NCBI RefSeq assembly: GCF_000315625.1
Contig: NW_005434589.1
Location: 261,330 to 325,329 of the forward strand
From: Guillardia theta CCMP2712
Lineage: Eukaryota; Protista; Cryptophyta
Length of the DNA: 64,000 nucleotides
Reading direction: 5' to 3'
Below are positions 2,729-44,315 of this stretch, one piece after another (position 1 is the first letter of the stretch; each line of letters opens with the position of its first letter). The notes beneath the pieces are model-generated. The model was not told the DNA's origin. It did not search any database and was given only the letters and a program-made list of their open reading frames with translations. Position numbers and translations under genes: made by a program.

Positions 2729-2828
2729 NNNNNNNNNNNNNNNNNNNNNNNNNNNNNNNNNNNNNNNNNNNNNNNNNNNNNNNNNNNNNNNNNNNNNNNN
2801 NNNNNNNNNNNNNNNNNNNNNNNNNNNN
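2729..2828. other. assembly gap (100 N)
   Basis: run of N. Confidence 1.
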
Positions 2829-5336: not shown

Positions 5337-5509
5337 GGTCATTGCGACGAATGGAAGGCTCGAGTCTGTCAGCTGCAAGAGCAGGAAGGGGATCAACGAA
5401 CGCGGAAGCTCACTGAGATGAGTAGAGCACGGAGGAAGAGTCACGCGTGGGCAGGGGAGGCGAAGTGGACCAGAGGAGGTTTCACGTAACCTTCACATCA
5501 GAGAAGCAA

Positions 5510-18445: not shown

Positions 18446-18820
18446 TGTTCATGGACCTTTTACGGATGATTCACAGGGCTTGCTGGACAAGCTCAGGTAG
18501 CTCCTAGATCTTCCTACACTATTGGTGCATATATCAAAATGCCATTTCCTTACCTTCTTCATCCAGTCAACCACCCAAAGTTTCTACCACCGGTACTTTT
18601 GTAGAACATCTCGAAGAAGGAACTTTCCATGAATTCACAACGTTGGAACTTCTGCTGGCCGGCCCGGCCCAAAAGTCCCGGCCTGCGCGAGTTAAAAGCC
18701 GCTAAAGTTTGAAACTTTGATGGTATAGTTCAATAAAGTTCAATAATGAGATGCAGAAGTTTCAAAGTTCAAAACACGCTGCGTTTCCCCACCGACATCG
18801 GGTGTAAAAGCGTAAGCGCC

Positions 18821-19863
18821 ATGGTCAGCGCTATAATGCTCGCCGCGTTTGCGATGCTCTTTTGCCCATCGCAGAGCTTCCGCCTGTCAAGTCTCCCGAC
18901 TGCTATGATCAGATACAAGTCTGTTGCAGACGTTACGCCAACGACAAGACCGGTCGTCTCAAGGCGTAGTTTGTGCAAGTTGAGTTGTCAGGCAGCGACA
19001 GGAATGTCAGACGAGGAGGAGGCGTCAAAGTCTTCTGTCCATGATGATTGTAATACTCTGAAGAGCAATCTTTTATTGGCTTGCTGCTTGTGTGATCGAG
19101 GATTCTCTGCGACAATGAAAGAGAGAGACGAGATATCGAAATTGATCTCAAAGTTGGAACGGATAAAATATTTCTCCGAACCAACCTTAGGCGTCAATGG
19201 AGACAACGAAGTTTGTCATCTCAAGGGTGTTTGGAGACTTGTGTACACGTCTGCCATCGATGTACTCAACCTTGCAGCGAGTCCTTTCACATCTGCTGGA
19301 GCAATCTATCAGGATATCAGGCGACCGCCCGAAATCGTCAACGTTATCGACCAGGTTCCGCGTGCATTATCCTTGCTACCTCCCTCAAGGTCCATTGAGA
19401 GTACATTGAGATTGAAAGTCACGACGCGAGCCAAGGCAAGAAGCCCCACGAGAGTGGCGTTAAGCTTCGAGAGGGTGAAAGTTGAACCCCGCACGCTGCT
19501 CGGGCAAGACGTCAGTTTTCTCCCCTCGCCGCAGATTGATCTTCCAAGAATAAGTCTCTTCGATGGAAGCGATGAGAGTCCAGCATACTTCGGTGCGAAC
19601 TGAGCGTCTTCTTACTTCCCCTTGCTTTGATTGGTTTGCTTGATAACTCCATTGACCTGCCGTGGGTCTGTTCACTCATTGCATCTTGCAGATATACTTT
19701 TTCTCGACAAGGATTTATTGATTATCAAGCAAAATACAGCTGGGCCTGGAGTTGAAGGTGCGACAATTTGGAAGTGCCATTATGGTTCATACTTTACACA
19801 TTTACAGGAGGAATCTTTGTTTCAAGAAAGGTTGACCCCGAGGAGGAGCCGATCCCTTTGTAG
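18821..19863 (+). CDS. plastid lipid-associated PAP/fibrillin family protein with bipartite presequence
   Basis: LKSNLL..DRGF..ISKLE..LKGVWRLVYTS..IYQ..AYF/DILFLDKDLLIIK; signal peptide MVSAIMLAAFAMLFCPSQS-F followed by Ser/Arg-rich transit peptide; two 3' introns. Confidence 0.88.
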
Positions 19864-24160: not shown

Positions 24161-24389
24161 AAGGTCTCTTGAAACCCGCCATGGGTCCCAAGAAGGAAAG
24201 TTTGGGGCAGCGATTTACTGATCTAACTGTATCTTGGCTGCTTCCAAAACATCACTATCAGAGTCTGAGGCACACTCGATATGAATAGTTCAAATGATCC
24301 TGCACAATTAGTCAATGTTTGACATCTTTATTTTCTTCCTCGTCGAGGTCCCTGGCATCGGAGGGTCGCCCAATGCCGACAAGCAGGGT

Positions 24390-27300
24390 ATGAGGGAAGC
24401 CATGCTCGTGCAGCCGGTGCTGCTGCTCGCCCTCCTCCTGCCCTCCCTCCCATCGTCCCATGCAGATCTTTACTTGGAAGCTTCTCCAGGACGAGCAGTG
24501 GGGGGCACCATGATAGTTCCGAGGACTTCCCTCCGGATCTTGTTGGGAGGGACATACAACACCAATCAAGTCCCTGCAAGTGGAGACAAGTTGTACATGA
24601 TCAGCTCTGCCGGCAGCTGCACCTCTGCCTTGGCCACAATCTCAGCGAGCGCGTTGACCAACGCAACAGTAGGCGACCTGCGAAGTGCTGTTATGGATTT
24701 CACCAAACTTTCACCAGCTATCAACAAGATGTGCATCTGCCCAGCCTCTTCGAAAACGGGAGCCTGCTTTCTTGGTGGGAACATGGAAGTTCAAGATAAT
24801 CTGATAGGAATTCAACTGGATGATGTGATTGGATACAATTTGACGATTCCGCAGCAGATCTGTAATTTTTCAGATTGTACCAAGCAGATAAAAGCAAAAC
24901 TCTCCACATACAACCGAAAATCACAGGCACTGGGAGATATAGCTGCAATTCTACCAGAGAAAACATGCTCAAGTATTACAAGCAAAGCTTCAACTTCGTC
25001 TCAAGCTGTACTAGTGTCTGGTCTGAATTACATCTATCCTTCACAAGCGCTCAACAGTATGACAAGTGGAATGTACAAGATCTGCTATAATCTGTTTGCT
25101 GGGTCAACCAACTGGTTGGAATCTGGGGTCTTCGTCAACTTGCAATCAAAGGTTGCTCACATCGAAGCGAACGGAATCCCCGCGATCAGTATTTATGTCC
25201 CACAAGCTTTGAATCAACTGATTAGGGTGTGTACCAATTGGAATTGTACCTCAACCCTTGGGGCTGGAGATCAAGTTTCCTTCATCCCTGTCGCTCAAAT
25301 GTGTGAATCCTCAACGAACCCAGCTTCTCCAACGCAAGGATACTCGGGTTTCCTCTCTCCAGCATCCTCTGGATTTCTTGGTCCGCAGTCTGCCGTAGAC
25401 AGTATCTTGAAGTCAGGTGGGTTTCTACCGCCAGCTACCTACCAGCTCTGCTTCAAAAAAGCGGGGAGCAGCTTTTGGTCATCGACAGGAACATACCTGA
25501 CGGTACAGAAACTGATCTTCGGTCTTGAAGTCAACGGGCTGAGCCCTCTGAATGGGCTGAAGGTCACGATTCCGAAGACAAGCAAGATTGTGCTGAAGTA
25601 TCTGAGTGTGAATGATGGGAGTCCTGGCGACTCCGTTGCCTTGATTGAGGTCTGGAAAAGCTGCAGCGACCTCTGCCAAACGCAGAAGATCAAGGAGTGC
25701 GACCCAAGCGTGCCGGATCAGTTCGCCGCCTCCAACTTCTTGAGCGCTCACGGGAATGACAAAGTGCTCGGGTCAACCACCTGCCTCGGTTCGTTTGAGA
25801 ATTCCTGCAGCCCGTCCACGGAACGGCGGCTGGTCAATCTCTCCTTCACCCCGAGAGGAAGCTATCAGGTGTGCTTCAGGCCTGCTGCTGCGTGCTCCTA
25901 CTTCGAGTGCTGGCCTGTCTGGAGCCCTACGGGAGTATCTGTGCAGATACAAGACTCCATTACCAGCATCGAGCTCAACGGAGCCATAGGAGGGAACAAC
26001 AACCTAGGAGATGGCCAGAGGATCAGGCTGCCACCTTTCGACTTCCACAGCCTCGTGTACTATGGGGCCACAGCGAAAATCTCTATCGGGCTGATGAGAG
26101 CAAATGAGGACTGCACCCAAGCAAGCATCAGCCTGCAGCTGACTTTCTCAGGTCCTGGACAGCCCGCAAATGTGACGGAGACCCGTCGAATCTTCGGGAC
26201 GAGCGGCAGCCTCGTCCCAGCCACTTACACTGTGTGCTATACCTCGGCATCTCAATCCGCTGCCGGTTTCATGAACTCAGGGATTTCTTTGACTCTGCAG
26301 ACTGAGATTGCTGGACTGCAGGTAAGCCAGCCGTTACCGGCTCTCCTCCTCCCCTGCTGATCCATTTGACAGGTCAACGGGATCAGACCCAACGCTGGGA
26401 TCATCACAGCCATCCCGACGGACCCCAAGGTCACCCTCGTTTCCTTTGGGCCTCGAGCTCCGGTGCTGGGAGATGAAATCTCCCTCCTCCCCCCCCGGCT
26501 GGACTGCGAGAACCCCTCGCACATCCCAGCGTCTTTTGACGGGATCACTTCAGGTCGGCTCAGTTTGGTTTCCCTGTCGTCAGCTTCTGGCCCTGACTCG
26601 CTGACTTTCTCGCCGCTTCTCTTTCTCACTCAGCTGCCGACCTCTACCTACAAGATCTGCTTCCGCCCCAACGGCACGTCGCCGACTAGTGTGGACACAG
26701 GCTTCCGTACGGCTGGACTCCTGACCTCTCCCCAATCAGCGTTGACGGGCCTGTTCGTGAACATGCCTCTCACATACACCCCCAACCAAGAGGGCAGAAA
26801 CCCTGGCCTGCGAACTGTCGTGGCAAAGAACGTTGGGAACCTTATAAGGCTAACTTCGGTCGGCTCAGTCTCCTTTATCCCCCATCAGCTCAACTGCCTT
26901 GACCTCGTCAACGACAACCCCCCGCTCGGCCCCGCCGGTCAGTACCTACACATGAACACGCTCAGCCCTTACCAGACGCTTGACATCAACCTGGTGGACA
27001 ATCTCTTCGGGCCCGTCGGAGTTCTCGGCGTCGGCCTCTATCAAGTTTGCTTCAAGCCGTCGGGCGCCTTGACGTTCATGACGACGGGGATAGCCGTCAA
27101 GGTGCAGGAGGACGTGATTCAGCTCACCGTCAACGACTGCACTCCCAACAACGGCCTGCGAGTCGCCATGCCCAAGTCATCTCAGAACATCTTGAGGATC
27201 CTGTCTGGAAATCAGCTGACGGGGAGCACCAGCGACAAGATCTCCCTCATCTTGCTGAGCGGTGACTGCACCTTGAGGGACGACAACCCGCCAGCCTTGG

Positions 27301-30300
27301 GCTCGAAGTTCTCAGGTCACATCAGCGCCGTCGACAACCTCTTCTCGTTTGTCGATCTCTCAGGTGTGCCGAGCATGAGCACGGGTTTCTATCAGATCTG
27401 CTTCAAGTCGAATACCTCCTCCTCCTTCGTCAGCACCGGGATCGTGATTGAAATCCAGCAGGAGATCTTCTCCCTGGTGGTCAACGAGGTCTCTGCTTTG
27501 TCTTCCTCTGCCCTCAAGGAGCGAGGGAATCTCCTTGGCTACTGCCTTGACTCCTCTTGCTCCACCCCCGGCAGGATCGGAGACGCCGTCACGTTCATTG
27601 GCAACTGGTTCTCTTGCGAGGACGAGGTGGCCGTGAACTCGCTCCTCGCTCTCAGCGCCAAGACAACCGACAGGACCTTCCCCACGGACTCTTCCTCCTC
27701 CTCCGTCGTCATCGACACCTTCTTGAGTGCTGAGGGGCTGCTGGACTACGAAGTCTATCAGATCTGCTTCCGCAAAGCCGGAAGCAGCACATGGAGGAGC
27801 ACGGGACTGTCGCTGCGAGTTCACGATGACGTGCTGGGGGTGGTTGTCAACGACGTGATGCCTCGTTATGGCCTCAGGGCGGCTGCTCCCAGGAGCGAGG
27901 GCGCAAAGTTCAGCTACTACAGGAGCAGGATCGGAGAGCCGGGAGAGACGCTCTCCATGATCCCCGCAACCCTCAGCTGCTCGAACCCCAACAACAACCC
28001 AGCAGGGGCAAGCGCGAACTCCACCGGCCACCTCATCTTCCAGGACACGAGCAGGACGGTGCTCCTCCCCTCCCAGCTCGCCATCATGCTGCCCGGGCTC
28101 TACCAGGTTTGCTACAGGGGAAGGACGGACAAGTTCTTCTCCTCCACGGGGATTTCTTGCCGTCTGCAGGACACCCTTACGTACATCAAGGTGAACAGCC
28201 AGCCTCGCGCTCAGTCTGCCGTCCTGCTCAAGTCCGACGGAGTCGCCATGGCGTTCGAGGGCAGCGCTCAGCTGCAGAAGGCAACCAAGGCCTCGCTGAT
28301 CATGAGCAGGGCTGACTGCACGGACACTGCCGTTGCAAACAACGCGCTCGCCGGCCCCTCCCGCTCAGGACACTCGTTGTTCCTGCTCGCTCCAGGTTTC
28401 AACTCCTTCATTGCCATGGACACATCGATCCTGAAGTCCAGCAACTTCCTCGTCCCCCTCACGTACCAGCTCTGCCTCTTCATCCCTCCTCCCACCAGCC
28501 CAACCGATCAGGGTTGGATCTCCACCGGCATCTCCCTGACCATCCAGAATGTCTGCCCAGCTACGAGCGCAGCTGGGAGCTTCGGATTCCTCGCGGCGTT
28601 CGAGAGCAGCAAGATGCCGTCGCAGAGCAACATCATCAACTTCCTTTTCCGCTTCCCCAGTCGTCCTCCCTCCGGCATCCTCACCATCTCAGGTCTTACC
28701 GGGACGCAGACGGAGGACACGGCGAGCCTGCTGATCTACGGCAACACAGTGGTGGACGAGGAGCACGTGCTCTCCTGCAGGAGCAACACCACCTGCTCTA
28801 CAAGGCTCAGCGGCTTCCTGGCTAATGGAGAGCAGATCCTTGACGTCCTTCTCCGAGTCGACGTAGCATGCAGCGACTTTGACAGCTGCGGGGAGGGACT
28901 CCAGTCGCTCAGCGTCAACGGCAACAGCCTCGCGCAGCTCCTCAGCCCCGGGCCCTTCGCCTCTTGCAGCAACGCCTGCGGTACCTTCGTTACGATGCTG
29001 CAAGAGACTTCTATCTCCTCTTTTACAGGAAGGCTCGGAAAAGAGATAGTCGTGCAGGTTCTCCTCCTCCTGCCTCCCCCTCCCCTCTGACATGTGGCAG
29101 GCGGGCGTGACCTCTCAAGTGAACGCAGGGACGTGCGGCGGCTTCTTGCTTGACGCCAAGATTCTCATCAAGGTCAGGAAAAGCCTCTTGTCGACCCACT
29201 CGGTCTTGGTAAGAGTACTGCCTTGCCAAGCTGCTTTCTTGCTGACCAGCCTGTGGGTGCAGGGAGCCTGGTCCCAGCTAGCAGGCGAGCTCACGATCCC
29301 ATCCATCCCCTACGACTCTGGAGACTGGCAGCACATCTCCTTTGCCCTCATCAACCCCTCCTCCTCCCAGCCTTCCAAGTACCCCTCTGTCTCCTTCTGC
29401 TCCTCCTCCTCCTCCTCCTCCTCCAGCTTGTATGTCCCTGCCACCGCTGCCAGCTCAGTGTTCGGAGGGGACGGGGTGCTGAGCGCGTCGCTCCCTCTTG
29501 ATTGGGTTCATGTCGAGCTAAAGGCCAGCAACGACAGGCTCAGTACGGGATATCGATACACGTTGCAGCTGCTGTCAAACATCCCCGTCACTTTCCCCGA
29601 GTATGCCGCTATCACTGTGACAGGAATCACCAATACATTGGTGAGTGAAGTTGGAACGCGTTGAGATGTTTTCGCTGGCGCATAGATGGCAGCCATCAGT
29701 AGAAGCGGAAGGGCAGGGGAGGAGGGAGAGGGGGAGGAGGTAGTGAGGATGAATGAGAGGGAACAGCAATCATCTTGAAGGATGAGGACGATAGAGGGAA
29801 AGGAATGGCAAGCGAAGTGAGTTTGACTTTTCCCGCAGACCAACGACAACTCAAGGTTCGGTCTGCTGCTGGGTAACTTTCGGCTCACAAACGAGGTCAC
29901 TTGCCAAGGAAGTGACCTTTGCTCGGCCATGGTCAACGTGTCTAAGATGTTAGACTCCGTGTCGTCATTGTCGCTACACCGAACGACCCTCGACGTAAGG
30001 GCGACGATGCTGCTGCCCTTGTACTGACCCTGCCCACCAGGTGTCCGTCTTCTGCATCGACTTCGGAGCAAGCAAGAAGTTCATCTCCTCTATCATCATC
30101 TGCCAGTGGAGAGAAGGAGGCTCCCGTTGCCAGGATGGGACGATGGTCCCTAGCACTCGCTACAGCGCTGGGCCATGGCAGGGTTGCGGTCCGTGCAGCC
30201 TCGACAAGAGAACAGTCCTACGAAACTTCGACTTGCAGGACCTCGTGGGGCTTTACGGCAATGTAATGCGATAAGGAAGAGTGCGGGGAAGGGGAATGAG

Positions 30301-33300
30301 GAAGAAGAGAGAGGAAAGGGGGGGGAAATGGAAAGGGGAAGAGTAGAAGGAGGAGAGGGGAGGAGTGAAGAGGGGAGGGAGGGGAAGGAGGAGGAGGAAG
30401 AGAGCGAATGGAGAAGAGGAGGAGAAGAGGAAAGGAGTGAAGAGGAGGTGGAGGTGGAGGAGGAGATTGTAATATTCTCGATGGTTCTCACGGTGCCTTC
30501 AGGTTTTGCAGGTCGAGCTGGTCCCGAGCCCGGACGTGAGCAAGCTGGGATGCTCCTTCGGGGAGATGGCGATTCGAGCAGTCATCTCCTTAAGCGTCGA
30601 GCTCTCGCAAGGGATCGGCAGCTGGAACTGGAGGAGGGGGCAGCTGAAGTTCCGCCCCCCCGACGGCATCGCCACATGCTCGACCCCCTCCAAGGACGAC
30701 GTCTGCCTCCCCCGCATCCAGGTACAGTTCGACCTCAAGAACCCCACGACCGGCAACCAAGTCCTCTACCCGAGTATCATCGCGCGGGGAGGTGGCTTCC
30801 GCTTCCAAACCTACACGCCAGCGATCGGCATCGACGTGCTGGCGCAGACGAACCTCTACTTCTACGCGACCGCTACGGAGAGCAACCCCGTGCTAGGGAG
30901 CTCTCAGGTGGGAAACGGAATCAACTCCATCTCTCTCTCGTTCCAGACGAACATCAGCATCCCCTCCGGCACCCTAATCACCCTCTCTGGCCTTCTTGAC
31001 ATGGCGACCCCTCCCGCCCTCTGCTCTCCCCAGCTTGCTCCTCCTACCTGCGACACCGGCACTTCCTGCATCTTCGAATCGTCCTCAGCCGTCTGCCGAC
31101 GAGGCGTCCCGATCTTGGGCACTGACCTCCCTCCCTCCTTCTCGGGCTCGTGGGATCAGAACGCTGGTACACTCATCTTCGCCGTCCTCCCATCGTTCCA
31201 GCAAGTCTACGGGCTGGACCTGAGCTTCTCCCTCCGCAACTCGCTCAGACCGAGGACGAGCGCACCCCAGCTGTTTCTCGAGGCGGCGCATCCAAGCGGG
31301 AGCTTCAAGGTGCTTCGGAGCAGAGTGAGGGGGAACGTGACCCTCGGCGAGCTGTTCTTCGCAAACTCCAGCTCGCAGCCCTCGTTCCTGTTCCTGCAGG
31401 GCAGCGAGACCCAGAAGGTCGAGCTGGAGATGAACGAGCTAACGGTCCAGCTGGAGACGAACGTCAGGCTAGCGGCCGGTTGCTGGGTACAGGTCTCCGG
31501 CCTCCGAGATGTCAGAAGGTGGGAGCCGTCGGGGACGAACATGGTGAAGACGGGAGAAATTATCGAGTCCAACATCAACGTCGTCGGCGAGGGCGTCTCG
31601 GCTCAAGGTTTCTTCTGGAAGGCTGCCGATGACTTGCAGTGGATGTGCGCGCGTTCCAACAGAACCAACCTGGTGCGGTTCGGCTCTGTGGTGGACCAGC
31701 AGTGGTGCAGGAGGCCGAGTGCAGACTCAGTCTACGTCTCCCTCAGCCGCTGCTTCGATGCCGGGCATCGAATCTCCTTCACCTTCCAGGTCCAGAACCT
31801 GAACGTGATCTCTCTCCCCCCACAGCCCCTCCTCATCTCTGTTCTTGGGGAAGGCGTCTCGGTAGCACAGCAGCGGCTCCCCCCGGCTCCTGTCACCAGC
31901 GTCATCATCACAGAGTGCACCGGCCAGTCTTCCTGCATTACATCCATCTTGCAAGACCCGACGTGTTATCGCACGGTGACCCCCCCCCCTCAACATATTG
32001 ATCGCTTGCGATTTAAGATGCACTGCACTGTTTCCACACATTGTATGGTCGGCCTCGGCTATGTATCTTCCCTGACTATAACCCTGGCCCGTTAACACGA
32101 TGGTACCCGAAAATTTCTCTTGATTAAATACATTCCATNNNNNNNNNNNNNNNNNNNNNNNNNNNNNNNNNNNNNNNNNNNNNNNNNNNNNNNNNNNNNN
32201 NNNNNNNNNNNNNNNNNNNNNNNNNNNNNNNNNNNNNNAAAAAAAAAAAAAAACATAGAAAAAATATAAAAAATATAACATATAAACATTTTTTATATAC
32301 ACCAACACAGGGTTTTCCCCCGGGGGCCCCCCCCCCCCCCCCCCCCCCCTCCTCTCTCTCTCTCCCCCTCTCTCTCTCCCTCTCTCTCCCTCCCTCCCTC
32401 CCTCCCTCCCTCCCTTCCTCCCTCCCTCCCTCCCTCTCTATCTCTCTCTCTCTCTCTGTCTCTCGCTGTCTCCTCCTTCCCGCCTCTCATGTCTCTGCAG
32501 GACTGTCGCTTCCTCCCTCCTACAGCTCGGCTCGACGCTGCTCTCCTCTCCCTCGAGGTTCTCTGCACAGACCTTGAGGACGCAGGTAAGTACGTCGAGC
32601 GGGTGGGAGTCTGCAAGGCGGACGATTGCAGCCAGTACGGGGCGGACTATCACTGGGATCAGACCCTTAACCGATGCTGTGACTCTAAGAGGATCTGTAA
32701 GGACTACCAGTGCTCGGGCACCCTCAGTAGCTGGACTTCAGGTCCGTGGTCGGGCTGCTCCAACAACTGCACGCGCCGGAGGACTGTGCTGCAGTCAGTC
32801 AACATCCTGCCCATCCTCTGCGACGGCAGCGGTCCATGCATGAGCCCTTCCTCCTTCGTCGTCGTCCTCTCGTTGTCAGCTCTAGTTCAGCAGGCTCGTT
32901 GCTCCCGCAACGTGCTGGATGCGTTGGTGAACCTGGAGCTCAAGTACTCCTACGACTCTCTAGCGTTCGCCACCGAGATTGCGAGGATCCAGCTGTTTGA
33001 CTTGCAGGAGAGCACCAACGTGTCGCAGTCGGAGAATCTTCTCCAAGGGCTCCTCCAGCTGAGCGGGAGGGTGTCTAAGGGAAATGAGCTGAGAATCACT
33101 GGACTACTGGGCAGCCAGACGGAGGACGCGAAGAACATCTCGATCCACAGCCTCAAGTGCAGCATAGACGCTAGGAAGCAGCGAACCTGCCAGGAGGCGG
33201 CCGTCGGAGTCTTCCAACCGAGAGGGGAGTGGGAGAGGGCAACTGGGACCATGAGGCTGGTGTTCGATGCCGACGTGCCAGCCATGAGCATCTTCGGGTT

Positions 33301-36300
33301 TCGATTCAGAATCCTCAATGCTGCCGTGTCTCAGCCTGCCGTCTTCCCAACGGCTACCGTCAGGTCCTCGACCTCCCAGGACGCCGTCTCCTCTCAGGTG
33401 GGAGTTCTCTCCTCTGCCGCCCCGCCCAAGATACAAGAGGCCCTCTTCTCGCAAGACAACCTGATCCTGGAGGGGCTCGTGCGAGTTCAGCTCATCCTCC
33501 GCTGCAACTTCGAGATGTCGCAAGGCACCGTCGTCTCCATGATCGGGCTCCTCAACAGCAGGACGTCAGACTCTGACTCCCTCCAGGTCAACTTGACCTC
33601 GGAGACCCGCAGTGCACGGTGGAAGCAGAGCACGGGGACGGTGACTTTGACTCTGTCTCGTCCTGTAGAGAGTGGCTCCCAGTCGCTCATCTCGTTCTAT
33701 CTCCTTCGCCCCACCCTCAAAGTTGATCCTGCTCCAGTCACAATCGTGATCTTGACACCAGGGTCACGGCTCTCAGTCACACAGCAACTTGGCTTGTTTG
33801 CGTTGGGGAACAACGAGGAGGCAAGCTTCCGGGACCTGCTCGTCTGGGACGAGACGACAGTGGCGGGAGAGAACAACCAGGTCTCCATCGCCTTCTCGCC
33901 CAACTTTAACCTACCCAGGGGATGCGAGCTGATGATCGCAGGACTAACAAGAGGTGCTGCGGACGCGGGGTCCACCTTCCCGGTCACCTTGCAAGCAGAC
34001 TCATCAGCTATGTCGACGACAGCGATATGGCACGCAAGCGATCTTTCCTTCTCCTTGGCTCTCCCGCAAAAGTTCTCCGCCTACCGGAGGCTTGTTCTGT
34101 CCTTCAACCTACAGAATCTCCCAGCACTATCCCCAGCAAGGAAGGTGTTTGTCTCCGGCTACTGCAAGAACGCCCTCAACGTCCCTTGGCTTGAAGCCTC
34201 CGGCCAAGTGCAGAAGGTCGATCAGGCTCCTCTCATCAGCCTCGCGAGTGTGGCCGAGAGCTCTCAGTCAGCCTCCAAGAACTCCACCATCTCTCTACTC
34301 CTCAGGACCAACCTAATACTCCGAGCTCGCTCCACCAACGTGGAGGTCACGGGGCTGGTCAGCTCACCGACTGATCAGACTTCGGTTGAGGTCTGCCTGG
34401 GCAACAGCGAGTCCTGGACGAGTGACGGGACTTGCTCGGTTGTTCCCAGCTCAGCACAGTGGCAGAGGGCTTCCGGAACTTTGCGCATCAGCTTCCAGCA
34501 GGACGTGGCGGCGGACCGTTACCTCCTCGTTACTTTTACCCTACTGAACCCCCCGCAAAATGTACAGAAGAACCTAAAGGTCTCCGTCTATCAGGCTCTT
34601 GCCAGCAGCTTCACCAAAGTCAAGGACGTCGCTGTCTTCGCTCCGACGGGATCAGCCCTGTCGTCGTCACCGTCAGGTGCTGCCTCCTCCTTCTTCATGC
34701 AGCAGTCCTCCTTCATACAGGGAGCGATCAGCAACATGCGCATGCAGTTTCAGTTTTCCTTTCCCATGGGTCCAAACTTGCGCGTGACTGTCTTGGGACT
34801 TATTGGATCGCCAGTGAGGCAGGATGGTCAAGTGCAGCTTGATGGACCTGACGCGGACTTGTTCGGGCGGCGAGCAGTCTGGGACTCGACAAGCTCCTCG
34901 CTGCTGTTTCAAGTTGCAACCTCGGCCTTCAAGCCCTTCAACCAGCTGGTTCAGTTGAGCTTTCTGTTCCGCAACCCTTACTTCTCCACTCCCGGCGGGG
35001 TTGACCCGCGCTTGACCTGCGATCACTTGGCCCAGCCGTATCTCTGCGCATCCTGCAAGCTCTTTAACGTCTCCAGCCAGCCTGTCTGGCGAGAGACCTC
35101 GATCTCCGAGTCCTCGTCGGTCAGGGGCGCCGTTAACACCGTCACCCTCAAACTTGTGGCCTCCGTTCAACTTCCGGCAAACACCGACATAACGGTGGTC
35201 GGCATTTCCTCCGGTCAGCTAGGAAGTCTGTCCAGCGGCGGTTTGAACGCTTCTTCCATCCGCGCGATCTCAGTTGACTCGCAAGGGACCGTTCACGTTC
35301 TCACAAACGCGAGTGTGATGGACTCCGAACCCTTCCAGTTTGACCTGCAAGTTACGAATCCTTCCAAGACAAGCGCCCCCGCGAATCTCACGGTGGGAGC
35401 AGTATACGTCTCTGCCTCCAAGACCTTCAGCATGCCCTTGGCCAGTCTAGTGGGATCGGTCTTGACAGGAAGTGAAGAACCAGCGTTCCTCATCGCTGCT
35501 GTTACTGAGAGCTCGTCCATAGATGGAGCGCAGAACAAGATAGACGTCAGATTGGTCGCCAACATCGGAATCCGGGTTGCGGACAAGATTACCATATCCA
35601 ATCTTGATGTGACCTTCCCGTCCATCTCCGGTACTTCAGTTGGAATCACAAGCTCAGTGCTGGAGGCGGTTGGCCTGTACACCAAGGCGACCAAGTCTCT
35701 TGTCTTGACTCCGAGGTTCACTTTGCCTGCGAAGCAAGAAATCAGGTTCAGCTTCGTGGTCTACAACCCCAAGAGTCCGTTGAGTCCTGTCGAGCTGCTG
35801 GCGTCCACTCCCTCCATCGCAAACTCGGTGTTGAAGGACCCGCTTGCTGTATGGAACGAGGGCTTCCTCAAGTGGAAGGGAGCGCAAGACCCTACCCTAG
35901 CTCGAAGTTCAATTCTCAATGGAGGAGACGTGAGAAGAGCCTGTGCCCTTCTCCTCCCTGACGTTCCAGCAGGTTTACAGCTGGAGTCTGGTCGAGCTGT
36001 CGGAGTCCAGCACGGTGGCTGGGCAGCCAAACACTCTCACGTTCCAGATTCGACCCAACGTGGACGTGGAGGCCGGGTCAGGCATGACGGTACGTCGTTG
36101 AGGTGCAGTGACGGAGAGGTTTGACCTGCCTCGCGACAGATCTCAGGCATCTCAGGTACCGCGACCCCTGACTCGACGTCCCTCAACATCCATGGCCTCA
36201 ACACCGTCGGGACGTGGACCAGGGCGAGCGGGACAGTAACGTTCCGAATCCCCGTGGCTCTGACGCAAAACTCCACCCTGACGATTCAGATTCAGATCCT

Positions 36301-39300
36301 CAACGGGATGACGTTGCAGCTGCCTGCAAGGCCGCAGGTAACGGCAGTGTCTTCCTCCTCCCTGACTCCCCTGACCCCCGAGACGCAGGTCTCCTTGTCT
36401 GGATCCAGCCCCCTCCAGGAGACCATCGCCATCCCATCCACAGCTGTCCGCACTGCCGACTCCTGCTGCCTGACCTTCTCCGGCGTCGCAGTCTTCCTCA
36501 ACGCGTCAGTCACCGAGAAGACAGCTGTTGTTGGAGAGGAGAACATCCTTGAGTTTTTCTTCAGAACCAACATCGAGATTCCTCTTACAAGCACTCTCCT
36601 CATCTCCGGACTTGATCAGGCCCGCTCCCTGGAGAACCCCAACATCCTGCCCCCATCGCTGTCATCGGGGTTGGCACAGTGGGATGCTCAAAACAATTTG
36701 CGGGTTCAGATGTCAGAGTCGCTCTTTGACCCTTGCTGCTCCTCCTCGCTCTCAAGCTGCCAACACAACTCGCTCATGCTTCGAGTGCAAGTGAAGAATC
36801 CTTCCGTCCCGTCTCCGCCAAGGGCCCTCAGGGCCTCGCTGCTGAACGCGCAAGGGGCTGCCCTCATAACAGCATGTGACGTTGCAGGAGCAGGCGACGT
36901 GCTGCGAGGATCTCAACCAGCCAGTTTGATCGGAACCTTCACTCAGCTTTCTCCAACAGCCGACAGCTCGTCGAACAACGTCACCGACCAGATCTCCATC
37001 CTGACCAGTGTGGGACTGACCAGATGTACTTCAACGGTGAGGAGCGGGCAGACTTCGTGGATCGTGGGCGCGACGCCTCCGGAAGGGAATCAGTACCTGT
37101 TCGATGGGCTCAAGGGCACAGTGGACGGCACGAAAGTCGCTCGAGGCAAAGCCATCGACCTTGACTTCGGGGAGAACTACCTCCTAGAGCAGTTTACCGT
37201 CTACATCCGCACGGTCGACGTCTGCGCGCTCAAGGATGCGGAGCTGTACTATCTCGACCAGTCCACAGGAACATGGAGGCTGGGTCTAACGTTTCACATC
37301 GCACCGACTTTGTCGTCCAACGTCAGCTCCTTTGCTTCACCTCCGATCGTGGCAAGGCAGTTCCGGATCCTACCGATCTCACCTCAAGACAACTTCGCCT
37401 CATGCACATACTCGCTGCTGCAAGAAGTTGAGTTCCTGTCTTGTCGGCAGAGTCAGTGCAGTCAACTTACCATCTCAAACATCACAAGCCCTCCCTCGGG
37501 CGGCTCCATCGTGACCTTCCTTGACTTCCCACCGTTCCTCATGTCCTACGGCTATTGGGACGCGGCGAATAAGAACATCAGCGTCTTTGCCATCTCCAAC
37601 TCTCCAGCATATCGGGAGATCAAAATTTCAGCTAGCTTTCTGAAAACAGGCATCCAGTCGAGAAACTACTTCACTGCTAGCTTACGTGATCCCAAGGGAT
37701 TTCAAAACATTCCTGAAACACCGTTGAGGTTCGTGAACTTGACTTCTCAGCCTTCAGGCAGTTCGTCATCTCAGACAAGTCCCTCCATTGTGCTCGCATT
37801 CTCAGAGACTCTCGTCGGTCAGACCTCGAGCATGGCTGGGGCGAGGAACTTGATTTCCGTCACCCTCACTGCAGCTGTGGATCTTGCAAAGGGTCAGCAG
37901 GTCACTATCAAGGGCTTCAACGGACCAACGTCGAGCTCTCAAACTCTCGTTCCTGTCTCGCCCTCTGGGATCCTCTCCACCACCTTCACGTGGCAGAACC
38001 TCTGCGCGGATCAGCCGAACCCATGCGGAGAGGTCACCTTCACTTTGACCGCCGCATGGTCAAGAGGTCTGAGAGTGACGGCAACCATGGAGTTTGTCAA
38101 CATGAATGACTTGCGTCCTTTGACTTCACCTCTGACCCTTTCGGTGTCTCCAGCCTTCGCATCGCAAACTCTCTGCAAGGTGATGAATGCTCAAGACCCC
38201 GGGGTATGTCAGCAGGCAGCCGACGTCCTCAATGTCGACCGCTACCCTGGACTTGTCAACGCATCCGTATCGCAGGGATCTGGTGTGGTCGGTCAGAAGA
38301 ACTTGATCACTGTGAATGTGATGCCCAACTTCGAGGTCAGGGCCGGCAGCTTGTTGAACTTGCTCGGCCTTGTGAACGTGGATGTCTTGTACAGTGACAT
38401 CATATACGACAACTCGAACGCGAACTTGCAAGCGCTCTCGTGGAGCAAGGATACGGGGACGCTGACATTCAAGGCTATCAACCCGCTGAACGGAGAGGCT
38501 AGCCCTTCGTTCTCTTTCTCCTTCGCCGTGACAAACTTCCAATCACCGGCAAGCTCTCCCTTCAACCTCAACATCAGCGGAGTTTACTCCGACAGCGTCG
38601 GGAGCTGCGGCAGGAAGATCTGCGACCTTCTGGGGGCCTCAGGGCCTGCTATATCTCAGCCCTTCACGTCAGCAGTCCCGTTCACCGTCTCTCCTCCTCA
38701 CCTCCTTCAAGCCCTGGAGTCTCCTGGTTTTGCTGTGCTGACAGTGTCTGAGAGTTCCAACGTGTCATCCCAAGACAATCTCATCACCATCGAGCTCGTT
38801 CCTAACGTGATGGTTTTCCCTGACACCAAGATCACCTTGTTGGACCTCGGGTCGCCCTCACCGGCCAATGCAAACTTCCCCATGCTAGCAAGCAATCAAT
38901 CAATCTCCGGGCAATGGGACGGGAGCGGGTCACTGACCTTCTCCCTTTCGTATCCTCTCTACGCCTACAAGACTGATCTCCTGCTCAAGTTCCTCTTGAA
39001 GAATCCTGCTTCCATCCAGCAACCAAAGGATGTGCGAGTGTTGTTTGCGGGATCGAGCACACAAAAATTGGTTGGAAGCATTCTTCGGGCAGCAGACACA
39101 GCGAAGATCGTTACACTCACAGTAGCAGAGTCATCCTCCATTGTGTTGGAAGATAACACCCTAAGTTTCCAGCTTGCTTCCAACGTCCCACTGATCCAGG
39201 TGAGAACTTTCCTTCCAAGACTTGTTCAATTCTTGATCGTTGTGTTACCAGGGAACTATGATCAATGTGTCGAACCTGACGGGAAGGTATGAAAGCCTCG

Positions 39301-42300
39301 AGCTGGTCAAGCAGTGCCAAGACAGCCTCGCAAGCGGTGCTGGCACAGGGCTTGTGACGTACGTGTCAACGAGGCAGTTGACCATCAATGTCAATGACTT
39401 GGTTGTTTCTGCTGCCAATGACCAGGTGACCCTGATGCGAAACTACACCACATGTTTTGTCGTGGATTCGCAGATCAGTTTTCTGCTTCCGAGAAGTTAT
39501 CGCGCGTTTGAGACCGTTCGCTTCAGCTTCACAGTGATCAACTGGAACTCTCTCCGACCGCAGGCTGTCGTCCCTCAAGTCTCTGCTGTCGGCTGCTCCG
39601 CCTTGTTGAGCCTCAGGGGCGACATGTCGTGCGATGCCAACGGTCGGGTGGAGCTCCCGAGGACTTCAGCTCGAGGAGAAGTGCTGAGATCAGGCGCAGC
39701 CCCCTTCATCCTTGAGAGGAGGATCGAGGAGACCAGCAGCCTGCTGGGAGAGATGAACCTAATCGTCGCAAGCCTCAGGTTCAACTTCGACCTCATCGTC
39801 GGCACCTCCCTCGTCCTCGGGAACTTCTCCAGCGGACTCGGCGCTCCGTTCGGGTCGTCGACGCCGAGCGGATCGATCAGCCTCGAGGGCGAGGACGCCG
39901 TGTGGTTCAACTCAATGGCGACGTGGAGACAGGAGGCCAGCACTTTGACCCTGGTGGTGACGAGAGTCGTACCGGCGAATCGCAGCCTCTCGATCCGGTT
40001 CTCGTTGCGGAACATGCAGTCGCTACCCCTCTCCAGATGCGCCCTGGGCTCCCCGTACTGCTCGGCAGGGGTCAACCAGGGCCAGTACTGCACGTCAGTC
40101 GGTGGCTTGTGCGCAGGACAGTGCAAGAACGGCAACAACATATGCGTCGCTCAGATCTGCGCTCCTCCCAACACAGGGAGTCAGTGCCCTGTGACCAGCC
40201 TGCTCTCCTCGAAGGGAACGGGAGGGCCTCCTCCTCTCGCCGCCTACCCGTACGGGTACGCAACCAACGTCTTTGACTCGGGGAACGGACCTGTGGAATT
40301 GAAGGGGGCAACGTGCACGGGAGGAGGTCAGTGCCTTGACTCTGGAAACTGTGTCGCCCCCAATACTGGCAGCATCTGTACGAGCCACTCGATGTGCACT
40401 GGGTAAGTCATGTCTTTCTGGCTAATTCTTGAAATCCTCTCTTTGTCATTCAATTCATTCCTTCTCATTTCCCTTGAAATTTTCATTTGCAACCCCTCCT
40501 TGTCATGTGCTGTACTATGATCGCTATTCTAACTCCTTTTCTTTCTTTGCCAGCATTTTCAATCCTGCGATCGATCCCTCACGCTTGTTCGAGCGCATTG
40601 GAAGTCAGAGATGTGTGAGAATGCAGATTGAAAATACCCTGACGCTCAGCCTGAGTCTGAACAATCGATTCAACCTGAGTGAAACGATGATAGGGAGCTT
40701 GAAGGGATTCTCAAACCCATCCTCTCCCGAATTCGTTACAAGGGTTATCACAGAGTCGTCGACGATTCCAAACTCTTACAACATCCTCACTCTCAGTCTA
40801 GTTGCAAACTTCAAGATCCTGGTGATTTGAACGTGTTTTATGTTCGTTGAAATGATTCCTTGCTGCAGGATATCAACACAGTGTCGTTGACATTGAAAGG
40901 TCTGCGCATTGCCGACTCTTCTGGAAAGTTGCCTGTGATGGGAGGTGAACAAGGGCTGCTGAAGGAGGTGAATTGTACTCAGAACAGCTCAAGCTTCACC
41001 TGTCGCTCTGTTGGGGCAGGGCTTGTGTCCAGTGACAGCATTCTTTTGGAGGCAAAAGCAGACTTGGAGATTTATTGCAAGTCATCGTCGGATGTTGTTT
41101 TGAAATCAGTCAGGGCGGCCTGCAATGATATCACAGATTCAATTTTCAACTTCCCTTGCAGCCAGTATCCTAATTGTCTCAACGGTTGGTGCAAGGCTTT
41201 CACAAACCTTGACATTGTTCCTTTCCTCTCTGCCAGCTCTTCCTGCAGCTCGCAGTCACCTCAGGGATTCGACCTTCAGATCTCCTCCAACGACGAAAAC
41301 GTTCACGCTCGCGTTCTTGTGCGGTCAAATGTCACTAAGGAATATGCAACATGGGACACTGCGTCGCAGATCGTCACGATAGCAGGAAACAAGGCGGTGA
41401 GCGGCTTCATCAACCAGAACACCCTCAAGTTTTCCTTCCGAGTCAAGAACCCTCAGCCATCGACAGTGTCCCCCACCCTTACCATCACCGGAAACACTGG
41501 AGACCTCAAGGCTATCGGGATATGCGAGGATCAGCTACAGCCCGGCTGTACCGCCGCCAACGAGCCCAGCCCTCTACGGAGCATCGTGACAGGACAAGTG
41601 CTGAAGGCGAATGGAATGGCGACCATCGAATCTCTCACCATCGCTGAGTCCACTGACTTCAAAGGACTTTCCAACACCATCTCAGTGTCACTGGAGTCGT
41701 TGAGGTACAAGTTTCCATCAGACATGACCATCACAGTTATGGGTCTCACTGGGTCGTCAACGACGAGCGGCAAGATAGCTGTCTCAGGCAACCGACTGTC
41801 AAGGTACGCGGAATGGGACGCCGCCACCGGAAACCTGAAGCTGACTGTGACGTACCTTCCTGCCCTCGAGACCGACCCCTTGCTGTTTTCTTTTGTCTTG
41901 ACGAATCCCGCATCAGCCCAAAACAAGCTCGTTCCGCAATGGACTGCAGCTCATGCCGGGACCAGCCTTGCCTTTGCTGTGCAGACTTTTGTATGCGCAA
42001 GCTCGTTGAACTGTCAGGGGATCCTGGGCGCATCGAGAGATCTCACGATCTCATCATGGAATGTCGCATCTCAGGTAAGACAGTCACGATCTGGTCTCGA
42101 AAAGCTGTAATCCTTAGCTTGATTGACACTTGCATTCGTTGGTTCAGACTGACTTCTTTTGTCTTATTTGCAGGATTATGTGAGTGGAAGCAAGAATAGC
42201 TTGCAGTTCTTCTTCGAGTCGAACATCAAGTTGACATCTCCGACAGTCACGTTGACAGTCTCCGGGATTCCACAGTCTTCCCTCGACTTTCACCCAGCCT

Positions 42301-44315
42301 CTACTGCAGTTCGCTTGTACTCATGTGACCGAGTTATTCAGAGGTCTTTCATTTGCTCGGGCCGAGATCTTTGTGCTTCCTACCTTGACCTGAAGCCTCC
42401 CAACGGGACTTTCCTGACAGATGCACATATGACTCTGAACTTGTCTTGCACTTTAGCGGCAGCGATCAAGGCGATTCACTTTTGTGACCAACCTGTTTCG
42501 TACCAGTATCAGGCTGAGACATGTATTGGAAGTTACATTGTCAATGTGACCGATATCGTCAGTCCTTGTGTTTCGTCTTCGAAAGCGAAGCTGCTGGTCG
42601 AGGCACCCGGATTGGACACTAATGTTGCGATAGATCTCTTTCTCAGTTACGCCTTCGACACTCGTTCTCCCAGACTCGTCTTTGTTCCATCTACAAACAG
42701 CCTCGTGCTCACAATGTCACCAAGACCAGAAGAGTTTTGGAAACATTCCGCTCTTTCATACCTCAACGGAAGATATCAGAACATGATAGCTCTTTGCCTT
42801 CACGCAACGAATCCAGCAGGAAATTCTCCTCCTGTGTTCCCAGGGCTCACAGCATCTCTCGGCAGCATCAACGTGGCTACGTCAAGTGCACTTGTCAACG
42901 GCGTTCTCGGAGCCCAGGTGCTGCCCTGCTCGGGTGTCCAGACCATCGTTACAACAGGAAGTTATCCAGCTGACGGGTACTGGATCTTCAACTATGACAA
43001 CATCTACTTGAACAAGACGTCGTGCAACTTCATCATTCAACCTTCAAAGTCGCCTGATATGCTCATCAAGGTACAGTTCACAGGGTTTGATATCTCGATG
43101 AAGACAGATGTCGTTCGAGTTTATGACGGGGACTCCACAGACGCCTTGTTGATCGGCGCTGTTGTTGACAACAACTTCGAGTACCTTTACACTGGCGACG
43201 GGCAGCCCTTCTCCTCAAAAATGATTTTCTACACACAAAACTGCAATTTTCTGATACGCTTGGAACGATACACCAACAATGGGCTACAATTCCAGCAAAG
43301 CTTGAACAAGGGATTTCAATTGCAAATCGAACTGAAGAACCCGAATTTGATGGATCATATCATCACAACGATTCAATATCAAGGAGGTCTCTTGACAGAC
43401 CTGCAGGTGCAAAAGATCAGATCGTCTCTCGCTCTCAGCTTGGGTCTGATGTTGTCATATGTGATCGTAGAATCGACAACCCAGTCCTCACGTTCTCTTA
43501 TCGACAGGGAAACTTCTGCTGCCATGCTCCAGGGAGCGCTGGACCGCTTTGTAAGGAATGGAAAGGCTCGAGCGTATCAAACCATCTCCTTGCGCATCCT
43601 AGCGAACTCGAACAGTGAAGCAGTCCAGGTCCTGAGCGAGCTCAAGAAGACCATCTCCTCTGGCACTCTCACTCAGCAGATTCGCTCTGCGGGTCTGACT
43701 GGGTCTGTATCACTGGTCAGCTCTGCCTTGTATCGATGCGGCATCGAGATCATCTGCGTCGTCGTTAACCAAGTCGTTACCACCGCCCCTATCATCATAG
43801 AGAATGTTACCATGACCACTCCCAAGCCTTTCCCTGTCCAGAAAGTCGTCAAGATCGTCGCTTTCGTCGTGGTTCCACTTTGTTCCGCGTGTGCTCTGAT
43901 ATGCTGCGGAGTGATCTTTGCGGCGTATCGCACATACTCGCGCAAGTTGAAACTCAGAAACGCGACGAAGAGTAAGTACCTGGAGTGGCTGGAGGAGCAC
44001 AAGGAGGGTCTCCATGGAGTTGACGGAAATCTCAAGCAAGTGTGCACAGAATGTGACTTCAACTACAGATTTCTAGAAGCAGACTGGGATCTCTACGTTG
44101 ATGAATTTTGTGCAAAATACTTCATGCATTTCGAGGCTGACAAGAAAACTTGGGCGAGTTTGCCGAAAGATTTCCCCATGCGGTGTGCTCAACTTGCGAA
44201 AGATAAAGTGGAAGGAACAGACAAGAAGAAGAAGGTTAGAGTTGCATACGTGTTGATTTGTGAAGAGAGGTGCTGACATTGCTTGCAGTCGTCTATGTTG
44301 CAGATCGCAATCTGA
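24390..44315 (+). CDS. giant (~6,000 aa) multi-repeat type I membrane / cell-surface protein
   Basis: Signal peptide MREAMLVQPVLLLALLLPSLPSSHA-D. Long collinear ORFs are joined by in-phase GT-AG introns (e.g. 26322-26372, 29058-29100, 31976-32500, 35930-35972). Two repeat classes, then CUB, TM helix and short tail ending SSMLQIAI. Confidence 0.8.
24470..28555 (+). repeat. 11 protein repeats of ~120-150 aa (type A, Y-x-x-C-F/Y...TG-x-x-x-x-Q)
   Basis: NKMCI, YKICY, YQLCF, YQVCF, YTVCY, YKICF, YQVCF, YQICF, YQICF, YQVCY, YQLCL, each preceded by a beta-strand-plus-Cys motif (e.g. ISLI..xxC). Confidence 0.85.
28590..42920 (+). repeat. ~22-23 protein repeats of ~130-150 aa (type B)
   Basis: consensus ESS-x4-5-N-x-I-x-L-x-L-x-x-N...ITISGLxGSxT...W-x3-4-GTL-x-L...FSFxLxNP. 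Confidence 0.85.
32139..32238. other. assembly gap (100 N) inside an intron of the giant gene
   Basis: run of N flanked by low-complexity polyA/polyC/CT sequence. Confidence 1.
42925..43340 (+). other. CUB domain within giant protein
   Basis: CSG..Y.NKTSCNFIIQ..IKVQFTGFDI..DVVRVYDGDSTDALLIG..F. Confidence 0.8.

What the first reader, a model, noticed from the sequence alone, without database searches (positions are those of the whole stretch)
24390..44315. ~6,000-aa modular type I cell-surface protein built from two uncharacterised repeat families
Seen: signal peptide, 11 type-A repeats, ~22-23 type-B repeats, a Cys/Gly-rich segment, CUB, a SEA-like juxtamembrane region, one TM helix (VVKIVAFVVVPLCSACALICCGVIFAAY) and a ~120-aa tail. 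Long ORFs join through in-phase introns, including across the N gap (ACG|gt...cag|GAC). I do not recognise either repeat as a named domain. Inference: a long rod-like adhesin/receptor or periplast/cell-coat scaffold, a candidate for prey capture, mating or virus interaction in an alga.
Basis: partly seen in the sequence, partly recalled or inferred. Interest (0 to 1): 0.85.

Follow-up and report, generated by a model that had tools for sequence, protein, structure and literature searches.

The report
Giant modular algal surface-protein gene
The region is one intact 20-kb gene of an alga that encodes a roughly 6,100-residue membrane-anchored surface protein built from two uncatalogued beta-sandwich repeats, and the assembly gap lies in an intron; its function is untested, and this scan has already noted similar giant surface-protein genes elsewhere in the same genome.

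Summary
A 13-exon GT-AG model (probably 14 exons) from 24390 to 44315 gives an uninterrupted reading frame of about 6,105-6,110 codons. In order it has a signal peptide, 11 type-A repeats, 22 type-B repeats, four Cys-rich modules (three nested in B units), a sub-threshold discoidin-like domain, a Cys/Gly-rich stretch, a CUB domain, a juxtamembrane domain, one TM helix and a roughly 110-residue tail.

Reads could not test the join across the N gap. The DNA contigs stop at its low-complexity flanks, and RNA reads are almost absent. A homologue could test it. P0005 is an environmental protein with one continuous 5,746-residue ORF and the same architecture. It aligns colinearly with the model and runs without a gap through that join and ten others. 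The gap therefore sits in an intron.

Neither repeat matches a Pfam family. Type A folds like IPT/TIG domains of plexin and Met. Type B is a nine-strand Ig-like sandwich found in at least 1,511 cluster representatives; the nearest are unnamed, and the few taxa and partner domains point to protists. In those proteins it sits beside extracellular modules. "SEA-like" is unproven.

The best reading is a conditionally expressed surface adhesion or recognition fibre. The novelty is moderate. Earlier notes of this scan describe other giant surface-protein genes in the same genome.

The parts
24390..44315 (+). Whole gene. Exons: 24390-26321, 26373-29057, 29101-29640, 29839-29994, 30041-30262, 30512-31975, 32501-35929, 35973-36089, 36140-39199, 39252-40402, 40554-40821, 40869-42074, and 42174-44234 (or to 44273 if unspliced). 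A probable last mini-exon runs 44289 (or 44304) to 44312, with the stop at 44313-44315.
   Evidence: GT-AG model with no internal stop. Junctions were read. Eleven joins are gapless against P0005.
24390..24464 (+). Signal peptide, about 25 residues (MREAM, then a Leu-rich core, then SSHA|D).
   Evidence: Read directly from the translation. No predictor was run.
24552..28547 (+). Eleven type-A repeats of about 115-145 residues. Each has an invariant Cys pair and a Y-Q-x-C-F motif, and the fold is IPT/TIG-like.
   Evidence: jackhmmer, alignments A2 and A4, AF2 pLDDT 92 and VIA Z 8.4-7.1 to plexin IPT.
28602..42893 (+). Twenty-two type-B repeats of about 105-135 residues. The consensus is N-T-I-T-V, then G-L-x-G-S, then W, then F-x-L-x-N-P, in a nine-strand sandwich. 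Units 1, 2, 4, 18, 20 and 22 are split by insertions in the variable region between the G-L-x-G and W strands.
   Evidence: and AF2 pLDDT 84.
28752..29259 (+). Cys-rich module copy 1, nested in B unit 1.
   Evidence: jackhmmer cross-matches between the copies and to P0005.
29863..30712 (+). Cys-rich module copy 2, nested in B unit 2. It spans three exons and carries a W-x-G-C-G-P-C motif that resembles TSP1.
   Evidence: Pfam TSP1 was not matched.
31862..33001 (+). Cys-rich module copy 3, which spans the gap-containing intron.
   Evidence: It aligns across the join with copies 1 and 2 and with P0005 1626-1824.
31976..32500 (+). Intron 6, which holds the N gap (32139-32238). Poly-A, poly-C and CT/CCCT tracts follow the gap on its 3' side.
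   Evidence: Sequence. DNA contigs of X1 and X2 give no cover over 31855-32445. The join is gapless against the homologue.
37094..37405 (+). Discoidin-like (F5/8 type C) domain, below threshold.
   Evidence: Pfam 17.1 bits against a cut-off of 28.2, covering profile positions 15-124 of 127. There was no PDB sequence hit and no hit in the P0005 counterpart.
40026..40746 (+). Cys/Gly-rich segment, which includes intron 10.
   Evidence: Translation. It is 30-36% identical to P0137, P0034 and P0005.
42282..42773 (+). Distantly related Cys-rich module nested in B unit 22.
42990..43178 (+). CUB domain.
   Evidence: Pfam PF00431 at 31.6 bits against a cut-off of 21.4, covering profile positions 16-76 of 110.
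43191..43841 (+). Conserved juxtamembrane domain that ends in R-C-G-x-E-x-x-C. The fold is unassigned.
   Evidence: Alignment A5. No SEA match came from Pfam or from a PDB profile search.
43845..43928 (+). Single transmembrane helix.
   Evidence: Hydropathy scan and sequence.
43929..44315 (+). Cytoplasmic tail. If the mini-exon is used it ends in I-A-I.
   Evidence: Homologues with a TM helix end in EEVAV, EEVAI or EEIAV.

Best explanation
This is one protein-coding gene of a photosynthetic protist. Earlier notes of this scan name it Guillardia theta, which I did not verify. The gene has 13-14 exons and encodes a type I membrane protein of about 6,100 residues.

Shown by the sequence: after signal-peptide entry into the ER, the ectodomain is a chain of 33 beta-sandwich domains. 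Eleven are disulfide-bonded and IPT/TIG-like (type A, at the distal end). Twenty-two belong to an uncatalogued Ig-like family (type B, the stalk). The variable region of type B, between its G-L-x-G and W strands, serves as an insertion site for Cys-rich modules. A discoidin-like domain sits mid-stalk. A CUB domain and a conserved juxtamembrane domain sit next to the single TM helix. The short tail probably ends in a hydrophobic-Ala-hydrophobic carboxy terminus shared with its orthologues.

Inferred: the chain would reach roughly 120-150 nm from the plasma membrane. It would work as an adhesion or recognition fibre that holds binding modules away from the cell. The tail would serve export or cytoplasmic coupling. 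The gene is nearly silent in the one culture RNA run sampled, so it is probably expressed only under particular conditions or at a particular life stage.
For: Gene integrity: 6,110 codons without a stop through 12 GT-AG introns.

Single gene and gap join:
- P0005 has one continuous 5,746-residue ORF on a 20-kb environmental contig, with A repeats, 22 B repeats and a homologous C-terminal module.
- It is colinear with 26691-44030 of the window.
- It aligns gaplessly through 11 exon joins, including the one across the gap.
- Metagenome loci L001, L004 and L005 repeat parts of the architecture.

Folds: type A pLDDT 92 and type B pLDDT 84. Type A is nearest to plexin and Met IPT and to the CNNM4 ectodomain.

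Extracellular context: there is a CUB domain. There are 162 Cys in the protein, with an invariant pair in each A unit. In other proteins type B sits beside REJ, Ephrin_rec_like, Kelch/attractin, Calx-beta, PA14, EGF and LamG.

Topology: one TM helix close to the C-terminus.

Tail motif.

Low expression: 3 reads from about 6% of run X5.
Against: - No transcript evidence exists for any splice junction, and no proteomic or localisation data were found.
- The function is inferred from architecture alone.
- The discoidin-like hit is below Pfam's cut-off and is absent in P0005. CUB is not detected by Pfam in the homologues.
- The fold matches are middling (Z 7-9) and typical of generic sandwiches.
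- One type-B protein (P0002) ends in an RCC1-like propeller, which is usually intracellular.
- Near-silence in RNA is also what a dormant gene would show.
Confidence: 0.72

Rival explanations
1. The region holds two or more separate genes, split for instance at the gap or between the A and B arrays, and the single 6,100-residue product is an artefact of joining open frames.
For: No RNA read spans any junction. The gap's true length is unknown, and DNA contigs do not cross 31855-32445.
Against: A homologue with one continuous ORF covers the A-to-B transition, the gap join and the C-terminal module colinearly and without a gap at the joins. L001 also runs from A repeats into B repeats. Only one signal peptide and one TM helix were found, one at each end.
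Confidence: 0.04
2. The gene is a silent relic or young pseudogene that is no longer used.
For: Only 3 RNA reads came from about 6% of a 12.8-Gb run, plus one 151-nt low-depth contig in a run that is only guessed to be RNA.
Against: An 18.3-kb coding sequence free of stops, with 12 intact GT-AG introns, is not expected of a decaying gene. The repeats are old and diverged, at 13-36% identity with no DNA self-similarity. Conserved positions are kept against orthologues that are only 25-32% identical.
Confidence: 0.07
3. The protein is mainly a shed structural component of the cell coat or periplast surface. It would be released by cleavage in the juxtamembrane domain, as happens with SEA-type mucins, and would not act as a membrane-tethered adhesin or receptor.
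For: A conserved 215-residue juxtamembrane domain lies just outside the membrane. A G-S-V-S-L string is present in the window's copy. An Atlas SEA cluster appears as a weak lead at 0.77.
Against: Pfam and a PDB profile search find no SEA. The G-S-V string is not conserved in any homologue. The conserved tail and carboxy-terminal motif argue that the anchored form matters.
Confidence: 0.15

Closest known systems
IPT/TIG-array surface receptors: plexins, Met/Ron, fibrocystin (PKHD1). The architectures are from my own knowledge; the fold match is.
   Same: Type I topology, an ectodomain with tandem E-set Ig-like domains, one TM helix and a short or signalling tail. Type A superposes best on plexin IPT domains (Z 8.4, 7.8, 7.4, 7.1) and on Met IPT (Z 6.8).
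   Different: The Pfam TIG model does not match any of the 19 A units. There is no Sema, PSI, G8 or kinase/GAP module. The bulk of the protein is the unrelated type-B array.
Bacterial Ig-like repeat adhesins and pilins: Big_5 and Big_9 families, CnaA-type and MSCRAMM domains, and giant adhesins such as SiiE.
   Same: A long chain of beta-sandwich domains serves as a stalk with binding modules. Type B gives Z 8-9 to SpaD, PitA and ACE19-type domains. A few units give faint Big_5 or Big_9 hits, the best at 2e-5.
   Different: The host is a eukaryote. The protein is anchored by a TM helix and not by sortase or T1SS. Most units (78 of 83) have no Big_5 match. The Cys-rich nested modules are not a feature of those families.
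Chlamydomonas FMG-1B and the sexual agglutinins, which are giant algal surface glycoproteins (from my own knowledge).
   Same: Very large, repeat-built algal surface proteins that mediate adhesion. FMG-1B is single-pass with a short tail.
   Different: No sequence relationship was tested or seen, and the repeat chemistry differs: the agglutinins are hydroxyproline-rich.
Other giant surface-protein genes noted by this scan in the same genome (s1-436972, s1-432773, s1-430482).
   Same: Same genome, same general kind: giant secreted or membrane-anchored chains of Ig-like repeats, uncharacterised.
   Different: As described, those have other repeat families and other end modules. Here there are two repeat families plus nested Cys-rich modules, CUB and a conserved tail. 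I did not compare the sequences.

Membership tests
IPT/TIG (Pfam PF01833), for type A | Match to the family HMM at or above its cut-off | tested here: not met
   No TIG match at E<=0.1 on the exon translations, and none at E<=1 on the 19 single units.
IPT/TIG (Pfam PF01833), for type A | E-set Ig-like fold that superposes on solved IPT/TIG domains | tested here: met
   VIA-align gives plexin C1, A4, A2 and A1 IPT at Z 8.4-7.1, Met IPT at 6.8, and CAMTA1 and EBF TIG at 6.7-6.5. These Z values are middling, so this shows the fold class and not proven homology.
CUB (PF00431) | HMM score above the gathering cut-off | tested here: met
   31.6 bits against 21.4, covering profile positions 16-76 of 110, and 26.9 bits on the whole exon. 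It was not reproduced in the homologues.
F5/8 type C discoidin (PF00754) | HMM score above the gathering cut-off | tested here: not met
   17.1 bits against 28.2, although nearly the full profile length is aligned. There was no PDB sequence hit and no hit in the P0005 counterpart.
SEA (PF01390) | HMM or profile match to SEA domains | tested here: not met
   No Pfam hit at E<=5. The profile of five homologues against the PDB gave only E 0.7-1.6 hits to unrelated chains. An Atlas SEA cluster scored 0.77, which is a lead only.
SEA (PF01390) | Conserved G|S-V-V-V autoproteolysis site inside a ferredoxin-like fold | tested here: inconclusive
   G-S-V-S-L occurs in the window's copy only and is not conserved in four homologues.
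Thrombospondin type 1 repeat (PF00090, PF19030) | HMM match | tested here: not met
   Only TSP1_ADAMTS at E 0.28 over 13 residues. Modules 2 and 3 have just a short motif of the W-x-G-C-x-x-C type.
Bacterial Ig-like Big_5 and Big_9, for type B | HMM match across the units | tested here: not met
   Big_5 matched 5 of 83 units (best 2e-5) and Big_9 matched 2 of 83. Array proteins P0003, P0004 and P0006 show no family that passes.
Type I single-pass membrane protein | An N-terminal signal peptide and exactly one TM helix near the C-terminus | tested here: met
   A hydropathy scan finds one TM-grade segment, at residues 5968-5995; one shorter, weaker hydrophobic stretch at 5934-5952 lies just before it. 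The N-terminus reads as a signal peptide. No dedicated predictor was available.

The most novel reading that the evidence does not exclude
Type B would define a large, still unnamed extracellular domain family of protists. It has at least 1,511 cluster representatives and arrays of up to 30 units. Its variable region between the G-L-x-G and W strands would be a built-in docking site for whole Cys-rich modules, a domain-in-domain arrangement. The A-B-CUB-TM orthogroup, with its conserved carboxy-terminal EEVAV-type tail, would be a conserved surface receptor or adhesion fibre shared by cryptophyte-like lineages, for instance for gamete, prey or symbiont recognition.
Probability: 0.2. Interest if true: 0.65.

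Novelty: new variant of a known kind. Interest (0 to 1): 0.45.

Why it matters
The work gives a clean, homology-checked gene model for a protein of about 6,100 residues. It shows that the assembly gap does not break that gene.

It also delimits two repeat families and one Cys-rich module that Pfam does not cover. One of them, type B, is widespread in environmental sequences that look eukaryotic, and it sits beside known extracellular modules. A curated model of it would annotate many giant proteins that are at present blank.

No paper on the molecular make-up of the cryptophyte cell surface turned up in the three literature searches run here. This gene is therefore a concrete candidate for surface proteomics. 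In itself, though, it is one more giant repeat surface protein in a genome where this scan has already noted several.

Tried and rejected
- Reads: X1 and X2 are genomic contigs and none crosses 31855-32445. RNA run X5 gave 3 reads and no joints, so the gap join and the splice sites could not be tested with reads.
- The search for homologous proteins: the A-region query found only P0001. The B-region and C-terminal queries found nothing. That is a limit of the word prefilter, because the exhaustive profile search found 1,511 proteins.
- P0104, a Mycolicibacterium protein annotated as FN3, matched the B profile. Its Pfam picture is compositional noise, so I dropped it.
- The SWM_repeat hits (16-17.5 bits against a cut-off of 27, over 20 residues) were rejected as chance.
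- The open frame at 30154-30996 (poly-Glu/Gly) is a GA-microsatellite inside intron 5 and is not coding.
- Types A and B are not related to each other (hhalign probability 0.1%).
- There are no recent internal duplications: blastn of the gene against itself found nothing.
- N-glycosylation sequons number 50, which is not above my rough expectation from composition, so I make no claim of heavy N-glycosylation.
- Three literature searches found nothing on this protein or these repeats.
- An Atlas search of the Cys-rich module failed because the machine was busy.
- The organism name was not verified here.
Full report
**The sequence**

The + strand carries a run of long open frames from 24312 to 44273, separated by short stop-containing stretches. 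G+C rises to 0.55-0.60 over the region, against about 0.47-0.49 in the flanks.

I read each boundary and found GT-AG introns that keep the frame. This gave a 13-exon model:
- 24390-26321
- 26373-29057
- 29101-29640
- 29839-29994
- 30041-30262
- 30512-31975
- 32501-35929
- 35973-36089
- 36140-39199
- 39252-40402
- 40554-40821
- 40869-42074
- 42174-44273

The model is 18,333 nt, or 6,110 codons, with no internal stop. The introns are 43-249 nt, plus the nominal 525-nt one that holds the gap. Eleven are phase 0 and one (40403-40553) is phase 2. The open frame at 30154-30996 is a GA-microsatellite inside intron 5.

**The gap**

The N run (32139-32238) lies between a GT donor at 31976 and a CAG acceptor that ends at 32500. 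Poly-A, poly-C and CT/CCCT tracts follow it on the 3' side.

Reads could not settle the join. Runs X1 and X2 are genomic contigs with no cover over 31855-32445. The raw RNA run X5 gave 3 reads and no joints from about 6% of the run.

I therefore used homology.
- A profile of type-B units searched against 1.84 billion cluster representatives returned P0005. P0005 is a 5,746-residue product of one continuous ORF on a 20,042-nt environmental contig.
- P0005 has A repeats, 22 B repeats and a C-terminal region homologous to the window's.
- By tblastn it is colinear with 26691-44030 of the window.
- A blastp alignment runs without a gap through the exon 6 | exon 7 join...CYRT|DCRFLPP... against ...YLDS|ERRFLPP....
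- Ten further joins are also gapless at the join itself. One of them (residues 1845|1846) has a 7-residue gap just upstream.
- The Cys-rich module that spans the gap also aligns across the join with its two intact sister copies.

The gap therefore sits in an intron and hides no detectable coding sequence.

**Repeats**

Iterated HMM searches over all six-frame pieces of the window gave 11 type-A hits and 23 type-B hits, all inside the gene and on the + strand. On the spliced model they resolve into 11 A units (residues about 55-1369) and 22 B units (1388 to about 5650).

Six B units are split by inserted sequence in the variable region between the G-L-x-G strand and the W strand. A Cys-rich module of 150-200 residues recurs at 1438-1592, 1728-1912 and 2296-2500, with a distant copy at 5447-5610. 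Each copy has a counterpart in P0005.

Units are 13-36% identical at protein level. There is no DNA self-similarity inside the gene. The arrays are therefore old and are not an assembly artefact. Types A and B are unrelated by profile comparison.

**What the repeats are**

Pfam finds nothing credible for either repeat.
- No family matched on the exon translations.
- None of the 19 A units matched TIG or anything else credible.
- Among 83 B units there were only scattered sub-threshold Big_5 (5 units), DUF2808, DUF7604 and Big_9 matches.
- Array proteins P0003, P0004 and P0006 show no passing family.

AlphaFold2 with repeat-plus-homologue alignments gave confident models: type A at pLDDT 92 and type B at pLDDT 84, the latter with nine strands.

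Foldseek against the PDB was weak for both. The exhaustive aligner placed type A nearest plexin IPT domains (Z 8.4, 7.8, 7.4, 7.1), the CNNM4 ectodomain (7.7), and Met, CAMTA1 and EBF IPT/TIG domains. It placed type B among pilin, CnaA-type, mu-homology and alpha-2-macroglobulin sandwiches at Z 8-9, with no family standing out.

In the ESM Atlas the best structural neighbours of type B are unnamed eukaryotic clusters (TM 0.80-0.84). The best neighbours of type A are unnamed Euglenozoa clusters, CNNM and TIG.

Type A is therefore IPT/TIG-like by fold only. Type B is an uncatalogued Ig-like family.

**Range and context of type B**

The profile search found 1,511 representatives at E<=1e-3 and 224 at E<=1e-30. 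Many of them are 2,000-7,600 residues long with up to 30 units. The ten I looked up come almost all from metagenome collections and carry no informative name.

The non-B parts of the top hits carry Kelch/attractin propellers, REJ, Ephrin_rec_like, ELAPOR-type TNFR, Calx-beta, NCD3G, EPTP, PA14, PA, fn3, LamG and EGF. One carries an RCC1-like propeller. This set is predominantly extracellular.

Among the hits, only the P0005 cluster combines type A with type B. Metagenome loci L001 (A repeats followed by B repeats) and L004, L005 and L006 (B arrays plus the C-terminal module) show that the orthogroup exists in several environmental lineages. L002 and L003 carry 7.8-8.3-kb uninterrupted ORFs followed by microsatellite DNA, so those homologues look intron-poor.

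**Other modules**

- CUB passes Pfam's cut-off in the window's protein, at 31.6 bits against 21.4. Pfam does not detect it in the homologues.
- The discoidin-like stretch is sub-threshold, at 17.1 bits against 28.2. It has no PDB sequence hit and no match in P0005.
- The juxtamembrane domain (43191-43841) is conserved and ends in R-C-G-x-E-x-x-C. It gave no SEA match by Pfam or by a PDB profile search. An Atlas SEA cluster scored only 0.77. 'SEA-like' therefore stays unproven.
- One TM-grade hydrophobic segment lies at residues 5968-5995.

**The 3' end**

After ...DKKKK there is a plausible donor (AAG|GTTAGA at 44235). Two in-phase acceptors end at 44288 or 44303.

Every close homologue with a TM helix ends in EEVAV, EEVAI or EEIAV: P0005, P0157, P0034, P0039 and L005. 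I take the spliced end as likely, at about 0.6.

From general knowledge, a hydrophobic-x-hydrophobic carboxy terminus can act as a class II PDZ ligand. A terminal valine can act as an ER-export signal. Which of these applies here is untested.

**Genomic context**

The neighbouring genes are ordinary eukaryotic ones:
- an AKAP7-type 2H phosphoesterase
- a PHO4 phosphate transporter
- a protein kinase
- a PAP/fibrillin gene

The PAP/fibrillin gene fits a plastid-bearing host. Earlier notes of this scan call the genome Guillardia theta and describe several other giant surface-protein genes in it. I did not verify the name.

**Interpretation**

Shown:
- one intact gene
- type I topology
- a chain of 33 beta-sandwich domains with nested Cys-rich modules and lectin-type modules
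- a conserved tail

Inferred:
- a fibre of roughly 120-150 nm on the cell surface that acts in adhesion or recognition
- expression that is conditional, because RNA is nearly absent in the sampled culture run

The rivals are several separate genes, a silent relic, and a shed coat component. They are weighed in their own sections.

**Verdict**

The structural inference is supported, and the proposed biological roles remain open. The novelty is moderate: a new variant of a familiar kind of protein, built from two uncatalogued repeat families, one of which is widespread.

Noticed in passing
window 32239-32480: Poly-A, a poly-C run of about 25 bases, and long CT/CCCT microsatellites lie just after the N gap. 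Two independent DNA runs have no contig over 31855-32445, which probably explains why the gap exists.
   Followed up: partly
window 30290-30470: A GA-rich microsatellite inside intron 5 creates a spurious 281-codon poly-Glu/Gly open frame (30154-30996).
   Followed up: yes
window 740-1912 (+), 3546-5444 (-), 14955-15638 (-), 18746-19603 (+): The neighbouring genes are an AKAP7-type 2H phosphoesterase, a PHO4 phosphate transporter, a protein kinase fragment and a PAP/fibrillin (plastid lipid-associated) protein.
   Followed up: partly
window 2729-2828: A second 100-N assembly gap lies outside the finding.
   Followed up: no
P0002 (4,508 aa, JGI metagenome): A protein with 26-27 type-B units ends in a full RCC1-like beta-propeller. 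That partner is unusual for a repeat that otherwise keeps extracellular company.
   Followed up: partly
P0005, P0157, P0034, P0039; L005 1-7272: Orthologues share a conserved tail element, K-V-L-W-I-K-R-A, and a carboxy terminus of EEVAV, EEVAI or EEIAV. The window's tail has the terminal I-A-I only if a small last exon is spliced in.
   Followed up: partly
L002 and L003 (JGI metagenome contigs): Homologues have 7.8-8.3-kb uninterrupted ORFs followed by TGTA-type microsatellites. That lineage therefore seems to lack the introns seen in the window's gene.
   Followed up: partly
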